Below, piece by piece: positions 14,557 through 22,168 of a stretch of DNA of 64,000 bases. The stretch spans positions 61,070,001-61,134,000 of the forward strand of contig NC_086386.1 of assembly GCF_036588685.1 (NCBI RefSeq), in the 5' to 3' direction. This DNA comes from Mytilus trossulus. Its lineage: Eukaryota. Below the pieces are notes generated by a model. The model worked only from the letters and a program-made list of their open reading frames with translations, had not been told where the DNA came from and ran no database searches. The translations under genes were made by a program, and so were the position numbers. The stretch's first letter is position 1; each line of letters starts with the position of its first letter.

Positions 14557-15458
14557 GAAACTTTATCACTTATATATCGACATACTGGTATCGTATCTAC
14601 AAAGAATATCACTGCAATAAAATATGTATACATTTACATTGTCTTTTAATGACTTAAACCTAGCCGATTTTAGAATGCATTTCCATCATGTATACCAAAA
14701 TTGGATTGCCCGGGTTAGACTATATACTTGGGTGATACCAACACTTTGACGTTTGAATTAGGTTTTAGATTTTCAATTATTTTTGCCTCTCCGATCTCAG
14801 AAGTAACATTTGTTTAATTGTGCATCTGGTGTAGAAACATGTTATTAATTGCAAGTTCGAAGATATTTTATTGTATTTGGAGACTTTAGACTATCGAATC
14901 GAAAATGATGCTAGCCAATCCAGATGCTATACAGGTATCTAAGTACTAACTCAACTGAACGAAAACACTTCTTAAACATACATTTCGAAATCAGTCAATC
15001 ATACTGTGGCTTTCTTTAATATATTTTTTTTTTCATTCGCAATATATGACAAACAAGAACAACAAAAAACATTTTTTAGACCGTATAGTAAGGTATAAAC
15101 CCCAAAATAACAATAAACCGACGAAGAAGGAACATAAAAGCTCATTAGTCGAAGATAAATTGATCCGTCATGTCAAAAAAAAGAAGAAAAAAACGACGAA
15201 AAGACTACATTCAGAAAAAGACAGCTTCAAAGAGCTAGCAACACTAACACCTTCAATAGCGGGGGTAATATAAGGTGTGTCGAAAGGGTAAGCAAATCCT
15301 GCTCCTCATTTTGGGAATCGTCGTCACGGTTCCTTGTGTAAGCACAGAATTCTACGATAAGTCTCTTTTTGAGTTGTCAATTTCGAAAGAAAAAAAAATA
15401 TAACGGGATTGACGTTACAAGAATATTTAAACATGCATATATATATATATATATATAT

Positions 15459-15797
15459 AAACGCCTAAAAAGTGTACATAACAACACCAATCACACAAAA
15501 AGGAACTATAAATGTAATTATTTATAAATATTTCGGATAACAGATATCCTTCGTCAGTCAAATTCTGATTTTAACATCAGAATTTGACTGACGAAAGAAT
15601 TTGACTGACGAAGGATATCTGTTATCCGAAATATTTATAAATAATTACATGTATAGTTCCTTTTTGTGTTATTGGTGTTGTTATGTACACTTTTTAGGCG
15701 TTTATATTATAATTTATTTTATTGTGTACATGTATCGTTACTTGTAACGATCCAGCGCCCTCGTGGGAAAAATCGTTGACTATTATTCAGACGTTTT
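15459..15797. mobile_element. Module C: short head-to-head (fold-back) non-coding Penelope-type element with hammerhead motifs
   Basis: 15459-~15570 is the inverted copy of ~15596-15705. A 17-bp local duplication agaatttgactgacgaa lies near the centre. Bounded by (TA)n on both sides. Confidence 0.75.
15600..15642 (+). ncRNA. Minimal hammerhead ribozyme-like motif (module C); mirrored on the minus strand at ~15520-15562
   Basis: CTGACGA-A-GGATA-tctgt-TATCC-GAAA-TATT: intact CUGANGA and GAAA cores with a 5-bp stem II. Stem I is weak. Confidence 0.65.
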
Positions 15798-15807
15798 ATA
15801 TATATAT

Positions 15808-16530
15808 ACCTGTTAGTCAAATGCGTTTTGTTTAAATATACTTTTTCACGCTTTTGGTCTTTTGGAAAATGTTGTTTGTGCTGTTTTTAGACCCTTCTAC
15901 AACGAAATTTGTTTGACATGCACACGTATAAAAATTGCGGTTTTTATCCAACGCAGTCATAGGTTTGAACGTAGTTTTCAATTTAGACTCGTTTATATTT
16001 TTTGTTTGGGCATGTAACATATTTTCCCTCCGGTTTATATGATCCGTTCATCCTATATATTGACTCTTAAAATTCAAGAGTTAATCTAAAAATGAGGGTA
16101 CTTTCTCTAAAAATTGAGGGTACTTTTTATATGGCCTTCCAAATACCGTTTCGATCCCTAACATCACTGAAGAGACATTTATTGTCGAAATCCGGATATG
16201 GTGTACTTAAGAAATATTGACACCGAATGTTTGTGGCACAACATCCTGTCCACAAGTTAACAATTTTTTTTTTTCTGTGACGTATCAATTTTATTTGGCA
16301 GTCGTCAATGGCAGTCAGCAGGGTTAAAGAACATCAGTTGTTCGACCTGTTAGTCAAATGCGTTTTGTTTAAATATACTTTTTCACGCTTTTGGTCTTTT
16401 GGAAAATGTTGTTTGTGCTGTTTTTAGACCCTTCTACAACGAAATTTGTTTGACATGCACACGTATAAAAATTGCGGTTTTTATCCAACGCAGTCATAGG
16501 TTTGAACGTAGTTTTCAATTTAGACTCGTT
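15808..16530 (+). mobile_element. Module A (left): hammerhead-bearing partial tandem (retrozyme / non-autonomous PLE), period 537 bp
   Basis: ~185-bp direct terminal repeat (15808-15992 and 16345-16530) around an internal segment containing the hammerhead. (TA)n on both sides. Confidence 0.8.
16161..16204 (+). ncRNA. Type I minimal hammerhead ribozyme (module A left)
   Basis: ACATCA-CTGAAGA-GACA-tttat-TGTC-GAAA-TCCGGA-TA-TGGTGT: stem I, core, stem II, palindromic stem III (ATCCGGAT), AUA cleavage triplet. Confidence 0.85.
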
Positions 16531-16552
16531 TATATATATATATATATATATA

Positions 16553-16620
16553 ACCATAAATTTGCGAAAGCAAATTTACAGATCTAACATTGTTGGTTTG
16601 ATGTTTAGACGAGTTGTATT
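16553..16620 (+). repeat. Module B 3' fragment
   Basis: aaatttgcgaaagcaaatttacagatctaacattgttggtttgatgtttagacgagttg is the reverse complement of 20726-20790. Flanked by (TA)n. Confidence 0.8.
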
Positions 16621-16801
16621 TATATATATATATATATAGTGTCTAAAAATAGCAACAATCAACATTCAATCTATATAGGTGTGGATCAGTTTGTAAATAA
16701 ACTGATGCAGTTACTAAATTGAATTATATAAGTGTCTAAGAATGTAACTTTAACACACTTATGAGTGTTATAAAATTAGGTGTTATATTTTATATATTAT
16801 T

Positions 16802-16842
16802 CACGCAATATTTCGCTAAACAAATTAGCTTCATCGGGCGTG
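16802..16842 (-). ncRNA. Hammerhead-like motif in PLE 3' UTR (left arm)
   Basis: Mirror image of 19251-19291. Confidence 0.6.
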
Positions 16843-17028
16843 TGCATCTATCAAGGTGAAATCGGATGCATGACAAAAAATATCTTTGTAGCTTGAGCTA
16901 CACAAAAGTTTAACATATTGATTAATGATCTGTATAAAACATTTTTTTGCCGTTTATTGTACATAAACATTTTTTTCAAAAATTTAAACAAATAGTTGTT
17001 TTAGTTAAATAGAAGTAAAATTGATGAG

Positions 17029-17961
17029 TTATTCCTTTGCTTTCGGGTAGAACTGTTTTTCATCCCTCTCATTAAGTCCATCAGGTTCAAGAGTACGTAG
17101 CTGATGCATCCAGAACCTTTCTCTCTTTTTCCTCATTTCTGAGTCCCAATTTTGGTTTACCTCAATTATTTGAAAGGTGATATTTTCAAAGGTATGTCCT
17201 GTTCTTAAGAGGTGTCTCGTAATTGGACAGTTTCTTCCTTTTGTATAAAACGACCGATGATTGTTTAGTCTGATGTTAAATGTGGTTTCTGTTTCACCAA
17301 CATATTGCAGCTTGCAAGTTCCACAAGTAAGAATATAAATACTATTTTCCGTTTTGCAATTAGATGTAACATAGATGTTGTATCGCTGCTTTGTTACTGT
17401 GCTGCTGAAAGAGTGGTCAGTGTTGGCGGCTTTACAGCACTTACAGTTCCTTCTACCGCATTGTTTGTAACACCCAAATTTTGAAGTTTCTTGTTTCTTT
17501 ACTTTTGATGTCACAAGTATGTCTTTGAGATTTTTGGGTCTGCGATAGGCAATAAGAGGAGGTGATGGAAAAATTTCTTTTAAGGACGAGTCATTTTCGA
17601 TTAGACGCCAGTGCTTTCGGATAAAAGATGAAATATTTGTCAAATCGGGATGGAATGTTACAACAAACGGAATTCTATCTGCACGGGTCGCCTTATTTTT
17701 GTATTCCATGAGGCTAGCTCGATCTTTTTCTTTAGCTTTATCAAAAGCGTCTGTGATGTTTTTGGTTTTATATCCTCTTGATTTCAGCTGTGTTTTTAGT
17801 TGTCCCAAACGATAGTTGAGTTTGGATTCAGAGGAGCAAATTCGCTTTAGTCTGATGGCTTGACTGTAAGGTATACTCCTGGAGCAGTGTTTCGGATGAA
17901 AACTTTTTGGAGAAAGGAACTGGTGTTTATCAGTTTTCTTTGTGTGGAGGTCAGTTGTCAT
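17029..17961 (-). CDS. PLE polyprotein C-terminal part: RT thumb, Cys-rich linker, GIY-YIG endonuclease (left copy)
   Basis: S.HP.H..RSIPYSQA.R..RIC thumb motif, CGRRNCKCC linker, IYILTCGTCKLQYVGET..RLNNH GIY-YIG, E.FW..L.T..P.GLN. The frame continues upstream through IKFT..FLD (RT motifs 6-7) to the palindrome centre. Confidence 0.88.
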   Translation of the reverse strand: MTTDLHTKKTDKHQFLSPKSFHPKHCSRSIPYSQAIRLKRICSSESKLNYRLGQLKTQLKSRGYKTKNITDAFDKAKEKDRASLMEYKNKATRADRIPFVVTFHPDLTNISSFIRKHWRLIENDSSLKEIFPSPPLIAYRRPKNLKDILVTSKVKKQETSKFGCYKQCGRRNCKCCKAANTDHSFSSTVTKQRYNIYVTSNCKTENSIYILTCGTCKLQYVGETETTFNIRLNNHRSFYTKGRNCPITRHLLRTGHTFENITFQIIEVNQNWDSEMRKKRERFWMHQLRTLEPDGLNERDEKQFYPKAKE

Positions 17962-18132
17962 GATCCCGTTTTTTACAAATGTGGTGGTGTCGAGAAAAGC
18001 AATTTTCTCGCTTGAAAATTCAGATGTAAATTTAATTAAATTTAATTTAAATACTCAATTAAATTTACATCTGAATTTTCAAGCGAGAAAATTGCTTTTC
18101 TCGACACCACCACATTTGTAAAAAACGGGATC

Positions 18133-19065
18133 ATGACAACTGACCTCCACACAAAGAAAACTGATAAACACCAGTTCCTTTCTCCAAAAAGTTGTCATCC
18201 GAAACACTGCTCCAGGAGTATACCTTACAGTCAAGCCATCAGACTAAAGCGAATTTACTCCTCTGAATCCAAACTCAACTATCGTTTGGGACAACTAAAA
18301 ACACAGCTGAAATCAAGAGGATATAAAACCAAAAACATCACAGACGCTTTTGATAAAGCTAAAGAAAAAGATCGAGCTAGCCTCATGGAATACAAAAATA
18401 AGGCGACCCGTGCAGATAGAATTCCGTTTGTTGTAACATTCCATCCCGATTTGACAAATATTTCATCTTCTATCCGAAAGCACTGGCGTCTAATCGAAAA
18501 TGACTCGTCCTTAAAAGAAATTTTTCCATCACCTCCTCTTATTGCCTATCGCAGACCCAAAAATCTCAAAGACATACTTGTGACATCAAAAGTAAAGAAA
18601 CAAGAAACTTCAAAATTTGGGTGTTACAAACAATGCGGTAGAAGGAACTGTAAGTGCTGTAAAGCCGCCAACACTGACCACTCTTTCAGCAGCACAGTAA
18701 CAAAGCAGCGATACAACATCTATGTTACATCTAATTGCAAAACGGAAAATAGTATTTATATTCTTACTTGTGGAACTTGCAAGCTGCAATATGTTGGTGA
18801 AACAGAAACCACATTTAACATCAGACTAAACAATCATCGGTCGTTTTATACAAAAGGAAGAAACTGTCCAATTACGAGACACCTCTTAAGAACAGGACAT
18901 ACCTTTGAAAATATCACCTTTCAAATAATTGAGGTAAACCAAAATTGGGACTCAGAAATGAGGAAAAAGAGAGAAAGGTTCTGGATGCATCAGCTACGTA
19001 CTCTTGAACCTGATGGACTTAATGAGAGGGATGAAAAACAGTTCTACCCGAAAGCAAAGGAATAA
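18133..19065 (+). CDS. PLE polyprotein C-terminal part: RT thumb, Cys-rich linker, GIY-YIG endonuclease (right copy)
   Basis: Same as the left copy except for 3 aa differences (F/C, C/Y, F/S). The RT catalytic core is absent because of 5' truncation. Confidence 0.88.
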   Translation: MTTDLHTKKTDKHQFLSPKSCHPKHCSRSIPYSQAIRLKRIYSSESKLNYRLGQLKTQLKSRGYKTKNITDAFDKAKEKDRASLMEYKNKATRADRIPFVVTFHPDLTNISSSIRKHWRLIENDSSLKEIFPSPPLIAYRRPKNLKDILVTSKVKKQETSKFGCYKQCGRRNCKCCKAANTDHSFSSTVTKQRYNIYVTSNCKTENSIYILTCGTCKLQYVGETETTFNIRLNNHRSFYTKGRNCPITRHLLRTGHTFENITFQIIEVNQNWDSEMRKKRERFWMHQLRTLEPDGLNERDEKQFYPKAKE

Positions 19066-19250
19066 CTCATCAATTTTACTTCTATTTAACTAAAACAACT
19101 ATTTGTTTAAATTTTTGAAAAAAATGTTTATGTACAATAAACGGCAAAAAAATGTTTATTCAGATCATTAATCAATATGTTAAACTTTTGTGTAGCTCAA
19201 GCTACAAAGATATTTTTTGTCATGCATCCGATTTCACCTTGATAGATGCA

Positions 19251-19291
19251 CACGCCCGATGAAGCTAATTTGTTTAGCGAAATATTGCGTG
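19251..19291 (+). ncRNA. Hammerhead-like motif in PLE 3' UTR (right arm), U4C core variant
   Basis: CACGC-CCGATGA-A-GCTAA-tttgt-TTAGC-GAAA-TATT-GCGTG: perfect 5-bp stems I and II, minimal palindromic stem III, CCGAUGA in place of CUGAUGA. Confidence 0.62.
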
Positions 19292-19746
19292 AATAATATA
19301 TAAAATATAACACCTAATTTTATAACACTCATAAGTGTGTTAAAGTTACATTCTTAGACACTTATATATATATATATATATATATATACGAGTCTAAATT
19401 GAAAACTACGTTCAAACCTATGATTGCGTTGGATAAAAACCGCAATTTTTATACGTGTGCATGTTAAACAAATTTCGTTGTAGAAGGGTCTAAAAACAGC
19501 ACAAACAACATTTTCCAAAAGACCAAAAAAGTGAAAAAGTATATTTCAACAAAACGTATTTGACTAACAGGTCGAACAACTGATGTTCTTGAACCCTGCT
19601 GACTGCCATTGGCGATTGCCAAATAAAATTGATCACAAGATGTAACAAAATGGATCTTAAAATAAATCTAATACTAAACAGAAAAACTTTTTAAACTTGT
19701 GGCCGCGATGTTATGCCACAAACATACGGTGTCAATATATCTTAGT

Positions 19747-19790
19747 ACACCAGATCCGGATTTCGACAATAAATGTCTCTTCAGTGATGA
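19747..19790 (-). ncRNA. Type I minimal hammerhead ribozyme (module A right, unit 1)
   Basis: Reverse complement reads CATCA-CTGAAGA-GACA-tttat-TGTC-GAAA-TCCGGA-TC-TGGTG (AUC triplet). Confidence 0.85.
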
Positions 19791-20316
19791 TAGGGATCGA
19801 AACGGTATTTGGAAGGCCATATTAAGAGTATCCTCATTTTAAGAAAAAGTACCCTAATTTTTAGATAAACTCTTGAATTTAAAGAGTCAATATAGGATGA
19901 ACGGATCATATAAACCGGAGGGAAAATATGATACAAAGCCCAAACAAAAAAATATAAACGAGTCTAAATTGAAAACTACGTTCAAACCTATGATAGCGTT
20001 GGATAAAAACCGCAATTTTTATACGTGTGCATGTTAAACAAATTTCGTTGTAGAAGGGTCTAAAAACAGCACAAACAACATTTTCCAAAAGACCAAAAAA
20101 GTGAAAAAGTATATTTCAACAAAACGTATTTGACTAACAGGTCGAACAACTGATGTTCTTGAACCCTGCTGACTGCCATTGGCGATTGCCAAATAAAATT
20201 GATCACAAGATGTAACAAAATGGATCTTAAAATAAATTTAATACTAAACAGAAAAACTTTTTAAACTTGTGGCCGCGATGTTATGCCACAAACATACGGT
20301 GTCAATATATTTTAGT

Positions 20317-20360
20317 ACACCAGATCCGGATTTCGACAATAAATGTCTCTTCAGTGATGT
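20317..20360 (-). ncRNA. Type I minimal hammerhead ribozyme (module A right, unit 2)
   Basis: Same motif as 19747-19790, 570 bp away. Confidence 0.85.
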
Positions 20361-20725
20361 TAGGGATCGAAACGGTATTTGGAAGGCCATATTAAGAGTA
20401 TCCTCATTTTAAGAAAAAGTACCCTAATTTTTAGATAAACTCTTGAATTTAAAGAGTCAATATAGGATGAACGGATCATATAAACCGGAGGGAAAATATG
20501 ATACAAAGCCCAAACAAAAAAATATAAACGAGTCTAAATTGAAAACTACGTTCAAACCTATGATTGCGTTGGCTAAAAACCGCAATTTTTATACGTGTGT
20601 ATGTTCAACAAATTTCGTTGTAGAATGGTCTAAAAACAGCACAAACAACATTTCCCATAAGGCCAAAAAAGTGAAAAAGTATATTTCAACAAAACGCATC
20701 TGACTAACAGGTCATATATATATAT

Positions 20726-21547
20726 AACTCGTCTAAACATCAACCCAACAATGTTAGATCTGTAAATTTGCTTTCGCAAATTTTTGGTTCTTCTCTCGCC
20801 GGGATTCGAACCCATGCTACTGTGATATCGTGACACCAAATCGCCTGCACTGCAGTCGTCCCGCTAGACCACATGACCACCTGGGCTCTAAAAAAAGAGC
20901 TTTCGCTGGCCATGTGTTACCTTTCCACGTCAGTTTTAATCTAGCGGCGTACTACAGTACATGATATATAAGGCATGAAGATGTTATTGTTACAGATCAA
21001 CTAAATTATCCATAGTAAAGGATCCTACAAATTATTGTAAGATACAGTCACAGAAAATAATTATATTCATAAGTACGTCTGAGTCAGTGACAACCCTACA
21101 ACAGATGTATCCATCGGATCGCCATTAATGATGGTTATACATGGCTGTGTACATAATGTATATACAACTCGTCTAAACATCAACCCAACAATGTTAGATC
21201 TGTAAATTTGCTTTCGCAAATTTTTTGTTCTTCCCTCGCCGGGATTCGAACCCATGCTACTGTGATATCGTGACACCAAATCGCCTGCACTGCAGCCGTC
21301 CCGCTAGACCACACGACCACCTGGGCTCTCAAAAAAAGAGCTGTCGCTGGCCATGTGTTACCTTTCCACGTCAGTTTTAATCAAGCGGCGTACTACAGTA
21401 CTTGCTATATAAGGCATGAAGATGTTATTGTTACAGATCAGCTAAATTATCTATAGTAAAGGATCCTACAAATTAATGTAAGATACAGTCACAGAAAATA
21501 ATTATATTCATAAGTACGTCTGAGTCAGTGACAACCCTACAACAGAT
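20726..21547 (-). mobile_element. Module B: 440-bp tandem (~1.9 units) with an internal tRNA-like Pol III promoter
   Basis: aactcgtctaaacatc at 20726 and 21166. Minus-strand A box (TGGTC(A/G)TGTGG) and B box (GGTTCGAATCCC) within 20791-20886 and 21231-21326. A T7 run lies just upstream of each head. (TA)n on both sides. Confidence 0.8.
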
Positions 21548-22168
21548 ATATATATATATATATGTTTGTTGTCATTTGTAATCATTTAGATGCAGCTCCC
21601 TTGTAACATTTTAATGACACTAACAATCGTATTCGGTTTCTAAAAACTTATTATGTTAAAGAATACTTCGGTTGATGATCTTTGTGCCATACAAAAAGTT
21701 GTACCAACCTCGACTTCGTCTCGGATAACATTTATATATTTAGATGCAGTCTACCAAAACACACTAAACTATCGACAAATAGTTTATTCTATGTAAAACA
21801 CAGTTTAATATAAAAATAAGGAGAATTTTGAATAACCAAATCTGAAAATGAATTAGACAAAATACATAAATCTAAAGCTGAAAACCGAAAAAGCTTGCTT
21901 AACAAGTTGGACAACTATTTCTCTAAACAGCACCAATCTTTATTAAAAGTCGGTCAATTTTGAAGCTGTGTTTACTTAAAAGTGAAACTATTGTACCTAT
22001 CAATACAATAGCATGATATATACATACAAGAGGTATACTATTTCAGTATGATATTACAAGGGACACGGTAACATATTTAAGATCAGAACATGCATAAAGT
22101 ATACACTGCTAGGACAAACATTAAACACACTCGGAAGAAACGATAGATTAATTTCTAAAGAGGACAGT

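What the first reader, a model, noticed from the sequence alone, without database searches (positions are those of the whole stretch)
15437..21563. A (TA)n-targeted nest: one Neptune-type Penelope element and three unrelated non-coding RNA modules stacked in one microsatellite
Seen: 6.1 kb built entirely of modules separated by seven (TA)n tracts, in the order C(-)/C(+), A(+), B fragment(+), PLE(-)/PLE(+), A(-) x2.3, B(-) x1.9. Three module types carry three different hammerhead motifs and the fourth carries a tRNA-like promoter. Established: Penelope-like elements encode RT plus GIY-YIG, carry hammerheads, form partial tandems and inversions, and are the proposed mobilisers of retrozymes. Inference: this is a helper-and-satellite system in which one (TA)n-specific PLE enzyme repeatedly inserts several RNA parasites into the same self-regenerating target.
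Basis: partly seen in the sequence, partly recalled or inferred. Interest (0 to 1): 0.88.

Follow-up and report, generated by a model that had tools for sequence, protein, structure and literature searches.

The report
Penelope-element nest in a TA microsatellite
One (TA)n microsatellite of a mussel genome has been hit at least six times by two families of Penelope-like retrotransposons and by two abundant non-coding RNA elements that carry the same short 3' entry signal; the general phenomenon is published, but the shared signal gives a testable handle on how these RNAs are copied.

Summary
The layout is real. Seven (TA)n tracts, 7 of the 9 (TA)>=5 tracts in the 64-kb window, separate repeat modules in the stated order.

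- Module C plus the unlabelled 91 nt after it is not an independent RNA module. It is the 5'-truncated tail of a second Penelope-like (PLE) family, 54% identical in protein to the first.
- The large PLE is a 5'-truncated head-to-head unit with the GIY-YIG domain but no reverse transcriptase (RT) core. It is a product, not the helper. Full-length 926-aa copies lie elsewhere.
- Only module A has a canonical minimal hammerhead. Both PLE tails carry non-canonical relatives.
- Module B has no ribozyme. It has only A-box/B-box remnants, which the Rfam tRNA model does not detect.

Genome-wide:
- About 1,800 A ends and about 4,000 B ends abut (TA)>=4.
- A and B ends share one TA tract about 300 times more often than chance.
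- Every recurrent 3' end in all four families is TYAGRC-N2-11-TATA.
- In stranded RNA-seq, B and A are far more abundant than the PLE, and an RNA end falls within 1 nt of A's predicted cut.

(TA)n bias of such PLEs and PLE-dependence of retrozymes are published. This scan had already described B (s1-820576) and a retrozyme-PLE link (s1-826654) elsewhere in this genome. Verdict: a new variant of a known kind.

The parts
15437..15459 (.). TA tract 1. The left unique flank ends ...catgca.
15460..15566 (-). Inverted arm of the PLE-2 tail (element positions 1-116). Its 3' end is the internal signal TTAGGCGTT-TATAT, abutting TA tract 1.
   Evidence: The same 1-116 arm is seen at L006, L020 and L058.
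15567..15595 (.). Centre of the PLE-2 fold-back, with a 17-nt duplication (AGAATTTGACTGACGAA x2).
15596..15796 (+). It ends TCAGACGTTT next to TA tract 2. The hammerhead-like motif is at 15605-15635.
15797..15808 (.). TA tract 2
15808..16530 (+). Module A, 537-nt subfamily, 1.3 units (87% identical to the A(-) units). Minimal hammerhead at 16161-16204. It ends TTAGACTCGTT.
16531..16552 (.). TA tract 3
16553..16620 (+). Strongly 5'-truncated copy of module B (about the last 65 nt). It includes the hairpin AAATTTGC-GAAA-GCAAATTT and the end TTAGACGAGTTG.
16621..16638 (.). TA tract 4, shared tail-to-tail by the B fragment and the PLE-1 tail.
16639..18037 (-). PLE-1 arm in the long form: 85-nt tail (16640-16724), internal TATATA (16725-16730), then 1307 nt of 3' UTR and GIY-YIG coding sequence. 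Hammerhead-like motif at 16802-16842.
18038..18056 (.). 19-nt spacer at the head-to-head junction.
18057..19362 (+). PLE-1 arm in the short form, ending at the internal signal TTAGACACT. Open frame 18058-19065 (335 aa) with GIY-YIG only. Hammerhead-like motif at 19251-19291.
19363..19388 (.). TA tract 5, shared tail-to-tail by PLE-1(+) and A(-).
19389..20713 (-). Module A array; in sense order [386-570][1-570][1-570]. Hammerheads at 19747-19790 and 20317-20360, with the predicted cut between 20323 and 20322. Non-coding.
20714..20726 (.). TA tract 6
20727..21551 (-). Module B array, 1.9 units of 441 nt. Box A at 20861-71 and 21301-11. Box B at 20802-12 and 21242-52. T7 run at 20890-96. Hairpins at 20764-83 and 21204-23. 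No ribozyme, non-coding, highly transcribed.
21546..21563 (.). TA tract 7. The right unique flank starts tgtttg...

Best explanation
The locus is an insertion nest. One (TA)n microsatellite has received at least six separate target-primed reverse transcription events of Penelope-like (PLE) type.

Two of these are autonomous-family products:
- PLE-1, a 5'-truncated head-to-head unit with the one-sided tail typical of PLEs.
- PLE-2, a very short fold-back of its last 200 nt.

Four are copies of two non-coding families:
- A, a 570-nt tandem unit with a minimal dimer-type hammerhead, that is, a retrozyme-like element.
- B, a 441-nt tandem unit with tRNA-gene remnants and no ribozyme.

Proposed mechanism:
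1. A GIY-YIG endonuclease of a Neptune-like PLE nicks (TA)n.
2. The exposed TA 3' end pairs with a UAUA stretch in the RNA, lying 2-11 nt after a UYAGRC motif.
3. The RT starts there, even when the signal is internal to a multimeric or circular RNA.
4. It runs for a variable distance. This gives a fixed 3' end, a variable 5' end, tandem multimers, and TA on both sides, which can be hit again.

Shown: the anatomy, the genome-wide TA adjacency and co-occurrence, the shared two-part 3' signal, sense transcription of A and B, and an RNA end at A's predicted cut.

Inferred: the nicking specificity, the pairing step, which PLE serves A and B, and whether the RNA template is circular.
For: Families and ends:
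- A has more than 2,000 candidate loci, B more than 2,100, PLE-1 912 and C 746. Partial units always run to the last base (x-570, x-441).
- C continues upstream into a GIY-YIG reading-frame end and an RT.
- PLE-1 has a full 926-aa frame with RVT_1 plus GIY-YIG and is 54% identical to PLE-2.

TA adjacency:
- Sampled loci: C 26/29, PLE-1 31/31, its tail 18/18, A array ends 29 of about 32. Background is 1.8%.
- About half of the 5'-truncated starts also touch TA.
- Whole-genome pattern counts: A end plus (TA)>=4 gives 2,166 matches against 5,569 A end words; B end plus (TA)>=4 gives 4,188; reversed-pattern controls give 0.
- On the first 28 Mb of contig 1, 37 of 54 A array ends abut (TA)>=4, counted by hand from the listed rows.
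- 7 of those 37 share the tract with a B end, where 0.02 would be expected (hand count).

Nesting in sampled loci: 10/20 C loci, 11/20 A loci and 9/14 PLE-1 loci hold another family within about 800 nt.

Signal:
- TYAGAC lies 7-11 nt from every 3' end, where P is about 0.005 per random 14-mer.
- All 7 sites with the motif followed by TATAT are used as ends, against 0 of about 9 TA-only sites and 0 of 3 motif-only sites.
- A holds a 26-nt block that is 23/26 identical to the PLE-1 tail terminus.

RNA:
- First mates lie 10-100 times more often on + than on - over A(-) and B(-).
- Depth is 1,100-2,400 for B, 100-330 for A and 0-7 for PLE-1.
- 786 and 951 reads cross the B unit junction.
- The strongest pile-up of molecule ends is at 20324, 1 nt from A's predicted cut.

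Hammerhead of A: intact in about 60 units. The helix III loop variants UCCGGA and UCUAGA both stay palindromic. The region varies 2.3 times less than the rest of A.

Published context: PMC8557442 reports (TA)n bias, the CX2-5CxxC linker, and inverted units with a one-sided tail.
Against: - No enzyme test was done. The EN specificity and the UAUA pairing are inferred.
- B shares only the short motif with the PLE tails; alignment scores are at shuffle level. Its helper is therefore unidentified.
- Four singleton A ends (positions 180, 309, 401, 449) next to TA do not fit the signal rule.
- The loci sampled for flanks were the best-scoring candidates, not a random sample. Only the pattern counts are unbiased.
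- The RNA reads come from a run labelled as another organism code and map at 93-99% identity, so they speak for the families and not for this locus.
- The end pile-up is seen in one of two runs and is 1 nt off.
- Contigs of the DNA run were too short to confirm the assembly of this particular locus.
Confidence: 0.8

Rival explanations
1. The (TA)n tracts are not a pre-existing target. They are 3' tails made at each insertion, by reiterative copying of the terminal UAUA by a telomerase-related RT. The nest then arises only because such tails lie next to each other.
For: The seven tracts add up to 132 nt, more than a single ordinary microsatellite. 7 of the 9 long TA tracts in the window touch these elements. 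PLE RTs are the sister group of telomerase RTs (PMC8557442).
Against: About half of the 5'-truncated starts of A and B also abut TA. Many tracts are shared tail-to-tail by two elements of opposite orientation. Published PLE work reads the bias as target choice (PMC8557442). Tail synthesis and target choice may both occur; only the exclusive version is the rival.
Confidence: 0.12
2. A and B are ordinary satellite DNAs that spread by DNA-level processes (unequal exchange, extrachromosomal circles reinserting at fragile TA tracts), with no reverse transcription and no PLE involvement.
For: They form long tandem arrays, up to 13 or more units. (TA)n is a known fragile, recombinogenic sequence (general knowledge).
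Against: The 3' end is fixed and the 5' end variable at thousands of dispersed sites. The end signal is the same as that of two RT-encoding families. Alternative ends occur only at internal copies of that signal. Sense-strand transcription is strong.
Confidence: 0.04
3. The order of modules in this window is an assembly artefact: mis-joins or a collapsed palindrome at TA tracts.
For: PLE structures are known to trouble assemblies (PMC8557442). The two PLE arms are 100% identical over 1101 nt. No read set tested here spans the locus.
Against: The same junction types recur on many chromosomes: PLE head-to-head pairs with one long and one short arm, A/B and C/B tail-to-tail across one TA tract, and 5'-partial plus full units.
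Confidence: 0.04
4. B is a classical tRNA-derived SINE, transcribed by RNA polymerase III and copied by a LINE. Its closeness to PLEs is coincidental.
For: Box A-like and box B-like words lie 59 nt apart, with a T7 run just upstream of the next head.
Against: - No tRNA model hit even at E<=10 on 121 nt.
- RNA reads run through the T7 run at full depth, and no discrete RNA start is seen.
- Copies are tandem multimers that end in TTAGACGAGTTG(TA)n, like the PLEs, and not in a LINE-type tail.
- The alternative end at position 107 carries TCAGAC...ATATA.
Confidence: 0.06

Closest known systems
Neptune-clade Penelope-like elements (Arkhipova 2006, as summarised in Craig et al. 2021, PMC8557442)
   Same: Single ORF with RT then a C-terminal GIY-YIG. 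A cysteine linker of CX2-5CxxC type before GIY-YIG. Frequent 5' truncation, partial tandems and adjacent inverted 5'-truncated copies. An extension ('tail') at only one end. (TA)n insertion bias. A hammerhead-type motif in the terminal non-coding part.
   Different: The tail here is 85-93 nt rather than 30-40 bp, and it is bounded by two copies of a defined signal. The hammerhead-like motifs deviate from the core (C4, extra A). Clade placement by RT phylogeny was not done.
Metazoan non-LTR retrozymes, including the mussel 350-390-bp family (Cervera and de la Pena 2020, PMC7229834; Li, Clavereau and Pollet 2026, bioRxiv 10.64898/2026.07.22.740005)
   Same: A is a non-coding, AT-rich tandem repeat with one type I hammerhead per unit. 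It is strongly transcribed from the ribozyme strand and co-resides with PLEs. The published mussel hammerhead itself is present in this genome.
   Different: A is 570 nt, outside the published 170-400 nt range. Its sequence is different and its helix III is reduced to one pair plus a palindromic loop. B has the same genomic behaviour but no ribozyme. The shared TA target and the 3' signal are not in the parts of those papers that I read.
Non-autonomous Chlamys PLE derivatives such as MRC1 (Craig et al. 2021, PMC8557442)
   Same: [quoted passage not shown]
   Different: Those belong to the N-terminal-EN clade in green algae and share longer 3' similarity. Here the similarity is a 6-nt motif plus UAUA, with one 26-nt block for A.
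LINE-SINE pairs with a shared 3' tail and terminal short repeats (for example UnaL2/UnaSINE1, Kajikawa and Okada 2002; cited from PMC4758252)
   Same: It works alike: a parasitic RNA borrows the helper's RT through a short 3' recognition element followed by a simple repeat that can pair with the nicked target.
   Different: Different RT and endonuclease classes. The products here are tandem multimers and inverted units, which LINE-type integration does not give.

Membership tests
Penelope-like element, canonical EN+ type (PLE-1, PLE-2) | RT domain followed by a C-terminal GIY-YIG endonuclease in one ORF | tested here: met
   L041:2760-5537 has RVT_1 (2.3e-10) and GIY-YIG (2.7e-6). The PLE-2 frame shows an RT, then the linker, then ...VVYLLQCKCGKQYVGES.... 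The window copy itself holds GIY-YIG only.
Penelope-like element, canonical EN+ type (PLE-1, PLE-2) | 5' truncation, partial tandems, adjacent inverted 5'-truncated copy, tail at one end only | tested here: met
   Tandem spacing is 3.25 kb. There are 8 PLE-1 and 4 PLE-2 head-to-head pairs, and each has one long and one short arm.
Penelope-like element, canonical EN+ type (PLE-1, PLE-2) | Hammerhead ribozyme in the terminal non-coding region | tested here: inconclusive
   PLE-1 reads CACGC-CCGAUGA-A-GCUAA/UUAGC-GAAAUAUU-GCGUG in 27 copies. It has three helices but C at core position 4. PLE-2 has no helix I in cis. Rfam gives no hit. Cleavage was not tested.
Neptune clade of PLEs | CX2-5CxxC zinc-finger-like linker upstream of GIY-YIG | tested here: met
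   PLE-2 reads C-GNKR-C-LT-C and PLE-1 reads C-GRRN-C-KC-C, read directly from the translations. Nematis shares this feature according to PMC8557442.
Neptune clade of PLEs | Placement with Neptune references in an RT phylogeny | not tested
   No named reference sequences were available in the tools. According to PMC8557442 the clade is itself weakly supported.
Neptune clade of PLEs | (TA)n insertion bias | tested here: met
   31/31 PLE-1 ends, 18/18 tail ends and 26/29 PLE-2 ends abut TA, against a 1.8% background.
Metazoan non-LTR retrozyme (module A) | Short non-coding tandem repeat with one type I hammerhead per unit that has an intact core | tested here: met
   The motif is CUGAAGA / 4-bp helix II / GAAA / A-UCCGGA-U / C17 with a 6-bp helix I, present in about 60 units. 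The longest stop-free frame is 69 codons. The unit length of 570 nt exceeds the published range.
Metazoan non-LTR retrozyme (module A) | Self-cleavage and circular RNA in vivo | tested here: inconclusive
   The strongest RNA-end pile-up (70 of 320 molecules, one of two runs) lies 1 nt from the predicted cut. Circles cannot be told from multimers with these reads.
tRNA-derived SINE (module B) | tRNA-related head recognisable as such | tested here: not met
   ARAGORN finds none. The Rfam tRNA model gives no hit at E<=10 on 1.5 kb or on 121 nt. The fold z-score is 0.01. Only box A-like TGGTCTAGCGG and a perfect box B GGTTCGAATCC remain, 59 nt apart.
tRNA-derived SINE (module B) | Pol III transcript from the head to a T-run | tested here: not met
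   Reads cross the T7 run at full depth (1,028-1,369). No start pile-up is seen at the head, and coverage is even across the unit and its junction.
tRNA-derived SINE (module B) | 3' tail shared with an autonomous partner | tested here: inconclusive
   Only TTAGAC plus TA is shared with PLE-1 and PLE-2. Tail alignments score at shuffle level.

The most novel reading that the evidence does not exclude
A portable two-part 3' entry signal, UYAGRC followed within 2-11 nt by UAUA, is sufficient for any RNA to be copied by a (TA)n-nicking Neptune-like PLE. Such RNAs include the PLE's own mRNA, a hammerhead RNA, and a ribozyme-free RNA with tRNA remnants. The RT starts at this signal even inside a circular or multimeric RNA, so tandem arrays are run-on (rolling-circle) cDNAs. 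The puzzling inverted PLE units with a one-sided tail arise because the two TA ends of one break prime at the two copies of the signal that bound the tail. This fits the 12 of 12 pairs with one long and one short arm.
Probability: 0.35. Interest if true: 0.75.

Novelty: new variant of a known kind. Interest (0 to 1): 0.5.

Why it matters
How Penelope-like elements integrate is called an open problem in the field's own review of it (PMC8557442). The open points are why they prefer microsatellites, why they form tandem and inverted units with a one-sided tail, and whether they really mobilise hammerhead retrozymes.

This locus and its genome-wide relatives give three concrete, testable items:
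- A defined cis-signal shared by helpers and passengers.
- Internal use of that signal, which explains alternative ends and the tail.
- A very abundant passenger RNA (B) that does without a ribozyme.

If bench tests confirm them, they would turn the proposed retrozyme-PLE link from co-occurrence into mechanism. The locus itself is not exceptional in this genome, which holds thousands of such insertions.

Tried and rejected
- **Rfam, whole region.** At E<=1 it gave only microRNA-precursor models matching the PLE palindrome. These are artefacts of a long perfect hairpin. No hammerhead or tRNA family matched.
- **ARAGORN.** No tRNA found.
- **Hammerhead in B.** None found with a relaxed descriptor.
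- **tRNA genes of this genome for comparison with B's head.** The tRNA-Glu resemblance I recalled therefore stays untested.
- **Extended tail similarity.** Between B and either PLE, and between PLE-1 and PLE-2 tails, scores are at shuffle level.
- **Snap-back copying as the origin of the inverted PLE pairs.** Rejected, because the arm that lacks the tail reaches further 5' in L047, L048 and L049. A self-primed copy could not then carry the extra tail.
- **DNA contigs of the best-holding run (X1).** Too short to test the assembly.
- **Literature searches for a published PLE-dependent SINE.** Nothing found.
- **RT phylogeny for clade placement.** Not attempted, for lack of named references.

Full report
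**Observation**

The 6.1-kb stretch is built as described.
- Seven (TA)n tracts of 12-26 nt separate blocks that are all repeats. The remaining 57.6 kb of the window has only two (TA)>=5 tracts.
- The order C(-)/C(+), A(+), B fragment(+), PLE(-)/PLE(+), A(-) x2.3, B(-) x1.9 is correct.

Three details needed correction.
1. The 91 nt after C(+) (15706-15796) belong to C. All 40 scored genomic copies match 15596-15796 as one piece.
2. The 85 nt at 16640-16724 are the 'tail' of the large PLE. In many copies the order is PLE 3' part, TATATA, these 85 nt, then (TA)n.
3. Rfam finds no hammerhead and no tRNA anywhere in the region. Its only hits are microRNA models fitting the long PLE hairpin, which are artefacts.

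**What the modules are**

Module C is not an independent RNA module.
- In longer genomic copies the sequence continues upstream through about 570 nt of untranslated region into the end of a GIY-YIG reading frame.
- A further copy gives a 639-aa frame with RT, a C-x4-C-x2-C linker and GIY-YIG.
- This second family (PLE-2) is 54% identical in protein to the first.

The large element (PLE-1) has about 900 candidate copies at 96-99% identity and a full length of about 3.25 kb. [quoted passage not shown] The window copy starts after the RT core and keeps only the GIY-YIG part (335 aa open). It is a dead-on-arrival product, not a helper.

Its head-to-head form is the norm for the family.
- Seven other pairs were fetched. 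In each, as in the window, one arm carries the tail and the other ends at the internal TTAGACACT-TATATA.
- The four PLE-2 fold-backs behave the same way, with arm ends at positions 116 and 201.

Module A is a non-coding unit of 570 nt, with a 537-nt subfamily.
- It has more than 2,000 candidate loci, and arrays of up to 13 or more units.
- It carries a complete minimal type I hammerhead: helix I ACAUCA/UGGUGU, core CUGAAGA, helix II GACA/UGUC, GAAA, helix III reduced to A-U around a palindromic UCCGGA, and C17.
- About 60 units keep it. The divergent subfamily has UCUAGA, still a palindrome, as expected if two ribozymes pair through this loop. The region varies 2.3 times less than the rest of the unit.
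- The published mussel retrozyme hammerhead is a different sequence and is also present in this genome. A is therefore a further family, longer than the 170-400 nt reported (PMC7229834).

Module B is a 441-nt non-coding unit with more than 2,100 candidate loci.
- It has no ribozyme by Rfam or by my descriptor.
- Its 'tRNA-like' part is a box A-like TGGTCTAGCGG and a perfect box B GGTTCGAATCC, 59 nt apart. Neither ARAGORN nor the tRNA covariance model sees it, and it does not fold better than shuffles.

The PLE-1 and PLE-2 tails carry related hammerhead-like motifs: (C/U)GA(U/C)GA-A, a 5-bp helix II with a UNUGU loop, then GAAAUAUU. PLE-1 has all three helices but C at core position 4 in all 27 copies seen. 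PLE-2 lacks helix I in cis. Their activity is unknown.

All four families have a fixed 3' end and variable 5' ends.

In fetched loci the 3' end is followed at once by (TA)>=3 as follows:

| Family | 3' ends abutting TA |
|---|---|
| PLE-2 tail (C) | 26/29 |
| PLE-1 | 31/31 |
| PLE-1 tail | 18/18 |
| A array ends | 29 of about 32 |
| Background | 1.8% of random positions |

About half of the 5'-truncated starts of A and B also touch TA. The tract is therefore on both sides, as expected for insertion into it.

Unbiased whole-genome pattern counts agree.
- The A terminal 15-mer occurs 5,569 times.
- It is followed within 0-3 nt by (TA)>=4 in 2,166 matches, roughly 1,800 distinct.
- The B end is followed by (TA)>=4 in 4,188 matches.
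- Reversed-pattern controls give 0-1.

I counted by hand from the listed rows for the first 28 Mb of contig 1.
- 37 of 54 A array ends abut (TA)>=4.
- 7 of those 37 share the same tract (under 100 nt) with a B end, mostly tail-to-tail. About 0.02 would be expected if the two were independent.

In the fetched loci, 10/20 C loci, 11/20 A loci and 9/14 PLE-1 loci hold another of the families within about 800 nt.

**A shared two-part 3' signal**

Every 3' end reads T(T/C)AGAC 7-11 nt before the TA tract. The chance is about 0.005 per random 14-mer. Every TA tract of the window is abutted by at least one such end, nine ends in all.

The recurrent alternative ends are informative.
- B position 107: five fetched loci, plus two further 1-107 matches in the listing.
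- PLE-2 position 116 or 100: six loci.
- The PLE-1 short end.
- Each lies at an internal copy of the motif followed by TATAT.

Of all TATAT/ATATA sites in the four elements, the 7 with the motif within 22 nt upstream are used as ends. The roughly 9 sites without the motif, and the 3 motif-only sites, are not used. Four singleton A ends are exceptions.

The PLE 'tail' is thus the segment between two copies of the signal. A also contains a 26-nt block that is 23/26 identical to the PLE-1 tail terminus, with an alignment score of 35 against 17.8 +/- 2.4 for shuffles. B shows no such extended similarity.

**RNA**

Two raw, stranded RNA-seq runs of a related organism label were laid on 18057-21168 at 93% identity or more.
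- First mates lie 10-100 times more often on + than on - over A(-) and B(-). In the usual library type this means RNA of the ribozyme or 'head' strand.
- Mean depth is 1,100-2,400 for B, 100-330 for A and 0-7 for PLE-1.
- 786 and 951 reads cross the B unit junction, about the local depth.
- Reads run through the T7 run, and no discrete B ends appear. B RNA is therefore multimeric or circular, and the DNA 3' end is not an RNA end.
- The strongest pile-up of molecule ends in the whole stretch (70 of 320, one of the two runs) is at 20324. That is 1 nt from A's predicted cleavage between 20323 and 20322.
- These reads speak for the families, not for this locus.
- The DNA contigs tested were too short to check the assembly here.

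**How it most likely works**

*Shown:*
- A nest of at least six insertion units of four families.
- Each unit ends in the same signal at TA.
- The passengers are far more transcribed than the PLE.

*Inferred:*
1. A Neptune-like PLE endonuclease nicks (TA)n.
2. The TA 3' end pairs with UAUA just after UYAGRC.
3. The RT starts there, also internally on multimeric or circular RNA, and runs on. This gives a partial unit plus n full units.
4. Each event leaves TA on both sides, so the site stays a target. The tracts now total 132 nt.

Which PLE serves A and B is open. PLE-1 has intact copies and a tail block in common with A.

The rule of one long and one short arm (12/12 pairs) suggests that the two ends of one break prime at the two signals. 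The short arm reaches further 5' in three pairs, which excludes simple snap-back copying. This is a hypothesis.

**Comparison with what is known, and novelty**

Already published:
- The (TA)n bias of Neptune and Naiad PLEs, the cysteine linker proposed to mediate it, pseudo-LTRs, and inverted units with one-sided tails (PMC8557442).
- Non-autonomous PLE partners that make head-to-tail arrays (PMC8557442).
- Retrozymes as likely PLE passengers (PMC7229834; bioRxiv 10.64898/2026.07.22.740005).

Already noted by this scan elsewhere in this genome:
- B as a PLE-type element landing in (TA)n (s1-820576).
- A retrozyme with PLE-type ends (s1-826654).

Added here:
- C is a second PLE family.
- Unbiased genome-wide numbers for TA adjacency and for shared tracts.
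- The two-part signal rule, including alternative ends and the origin of the tail.
- The expression ranking B > A >> PLE.
- An in vivo RNA end at A's cut site.

I rate it a new variant of a known kind, with moderate interest.

Noticed in passing
G000 contig C10, about 51.257-51.302 Mb (outside the window): More than 60 high-scoring tRNA genes sit in a 1505-bp tandem repeat, with two tRNAs 441 and 1064 nt apart, in blocks of both orientations. The 441-nt spacing equals B's unit length, which is probably coincidence.
   Followed up: no
L031:545-610 and L039 (reverse strand, about 2320-2390): The flanks of A arrays hold the published Mytilus galloprovincialis retrozyme hammerhead (CTGATGA-GTCTTTTGTAGAC-GAAACGCGCGTC), as in the Mg353 construct in the supplement of PMC7229834. 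The genome is therefore a Mytilus-type mussel, and A is a separate family.
   Followed up: partly
window 16639-19362; L043-L049; L006, L020, L058: In 12 of 12 head-to-head PLE pairs (8 PLE-1, 4 PLE-2) one arm starts at the terminal signal and the other at the internal signal about 90 nt upstream. In L047-L049 the arm without the tail reaches further 5'.
   Followed up: partly
genome-wide; window 20764-20783: About 20 of 45 5'-partial B units start at positions 391-394, inside the perfect hairpin AAATTTGC-GAAA-GCAAATTT. This gives a canonical 1.11-unit copy. No explanation was found, and the RNA reads show no matching end.
   Followed up: partly
window 20889: In RNA reads the T7/A7 run of B carries an extra A (about 26%) or an extra C (about 28%). 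Many expressed copies therefore have an interrupted or longer T-run.
   Followed up: no
window 17943-18151: Rfam microRNA-precursor models (MIR8007 and others, E down to 1e-18, all below the gathering score) match the centre of the PLE palindrome on both strands. This is a generic long-hairpin artefact.
   Followed up: yes
I read the sequence but did not test the claim.
   Followed up: no
runs X1-X14: DNA runs under four different organism codes each hold about half of the sampled words of the stretch. The families are therefore shared by several related species.
   Followed up: no
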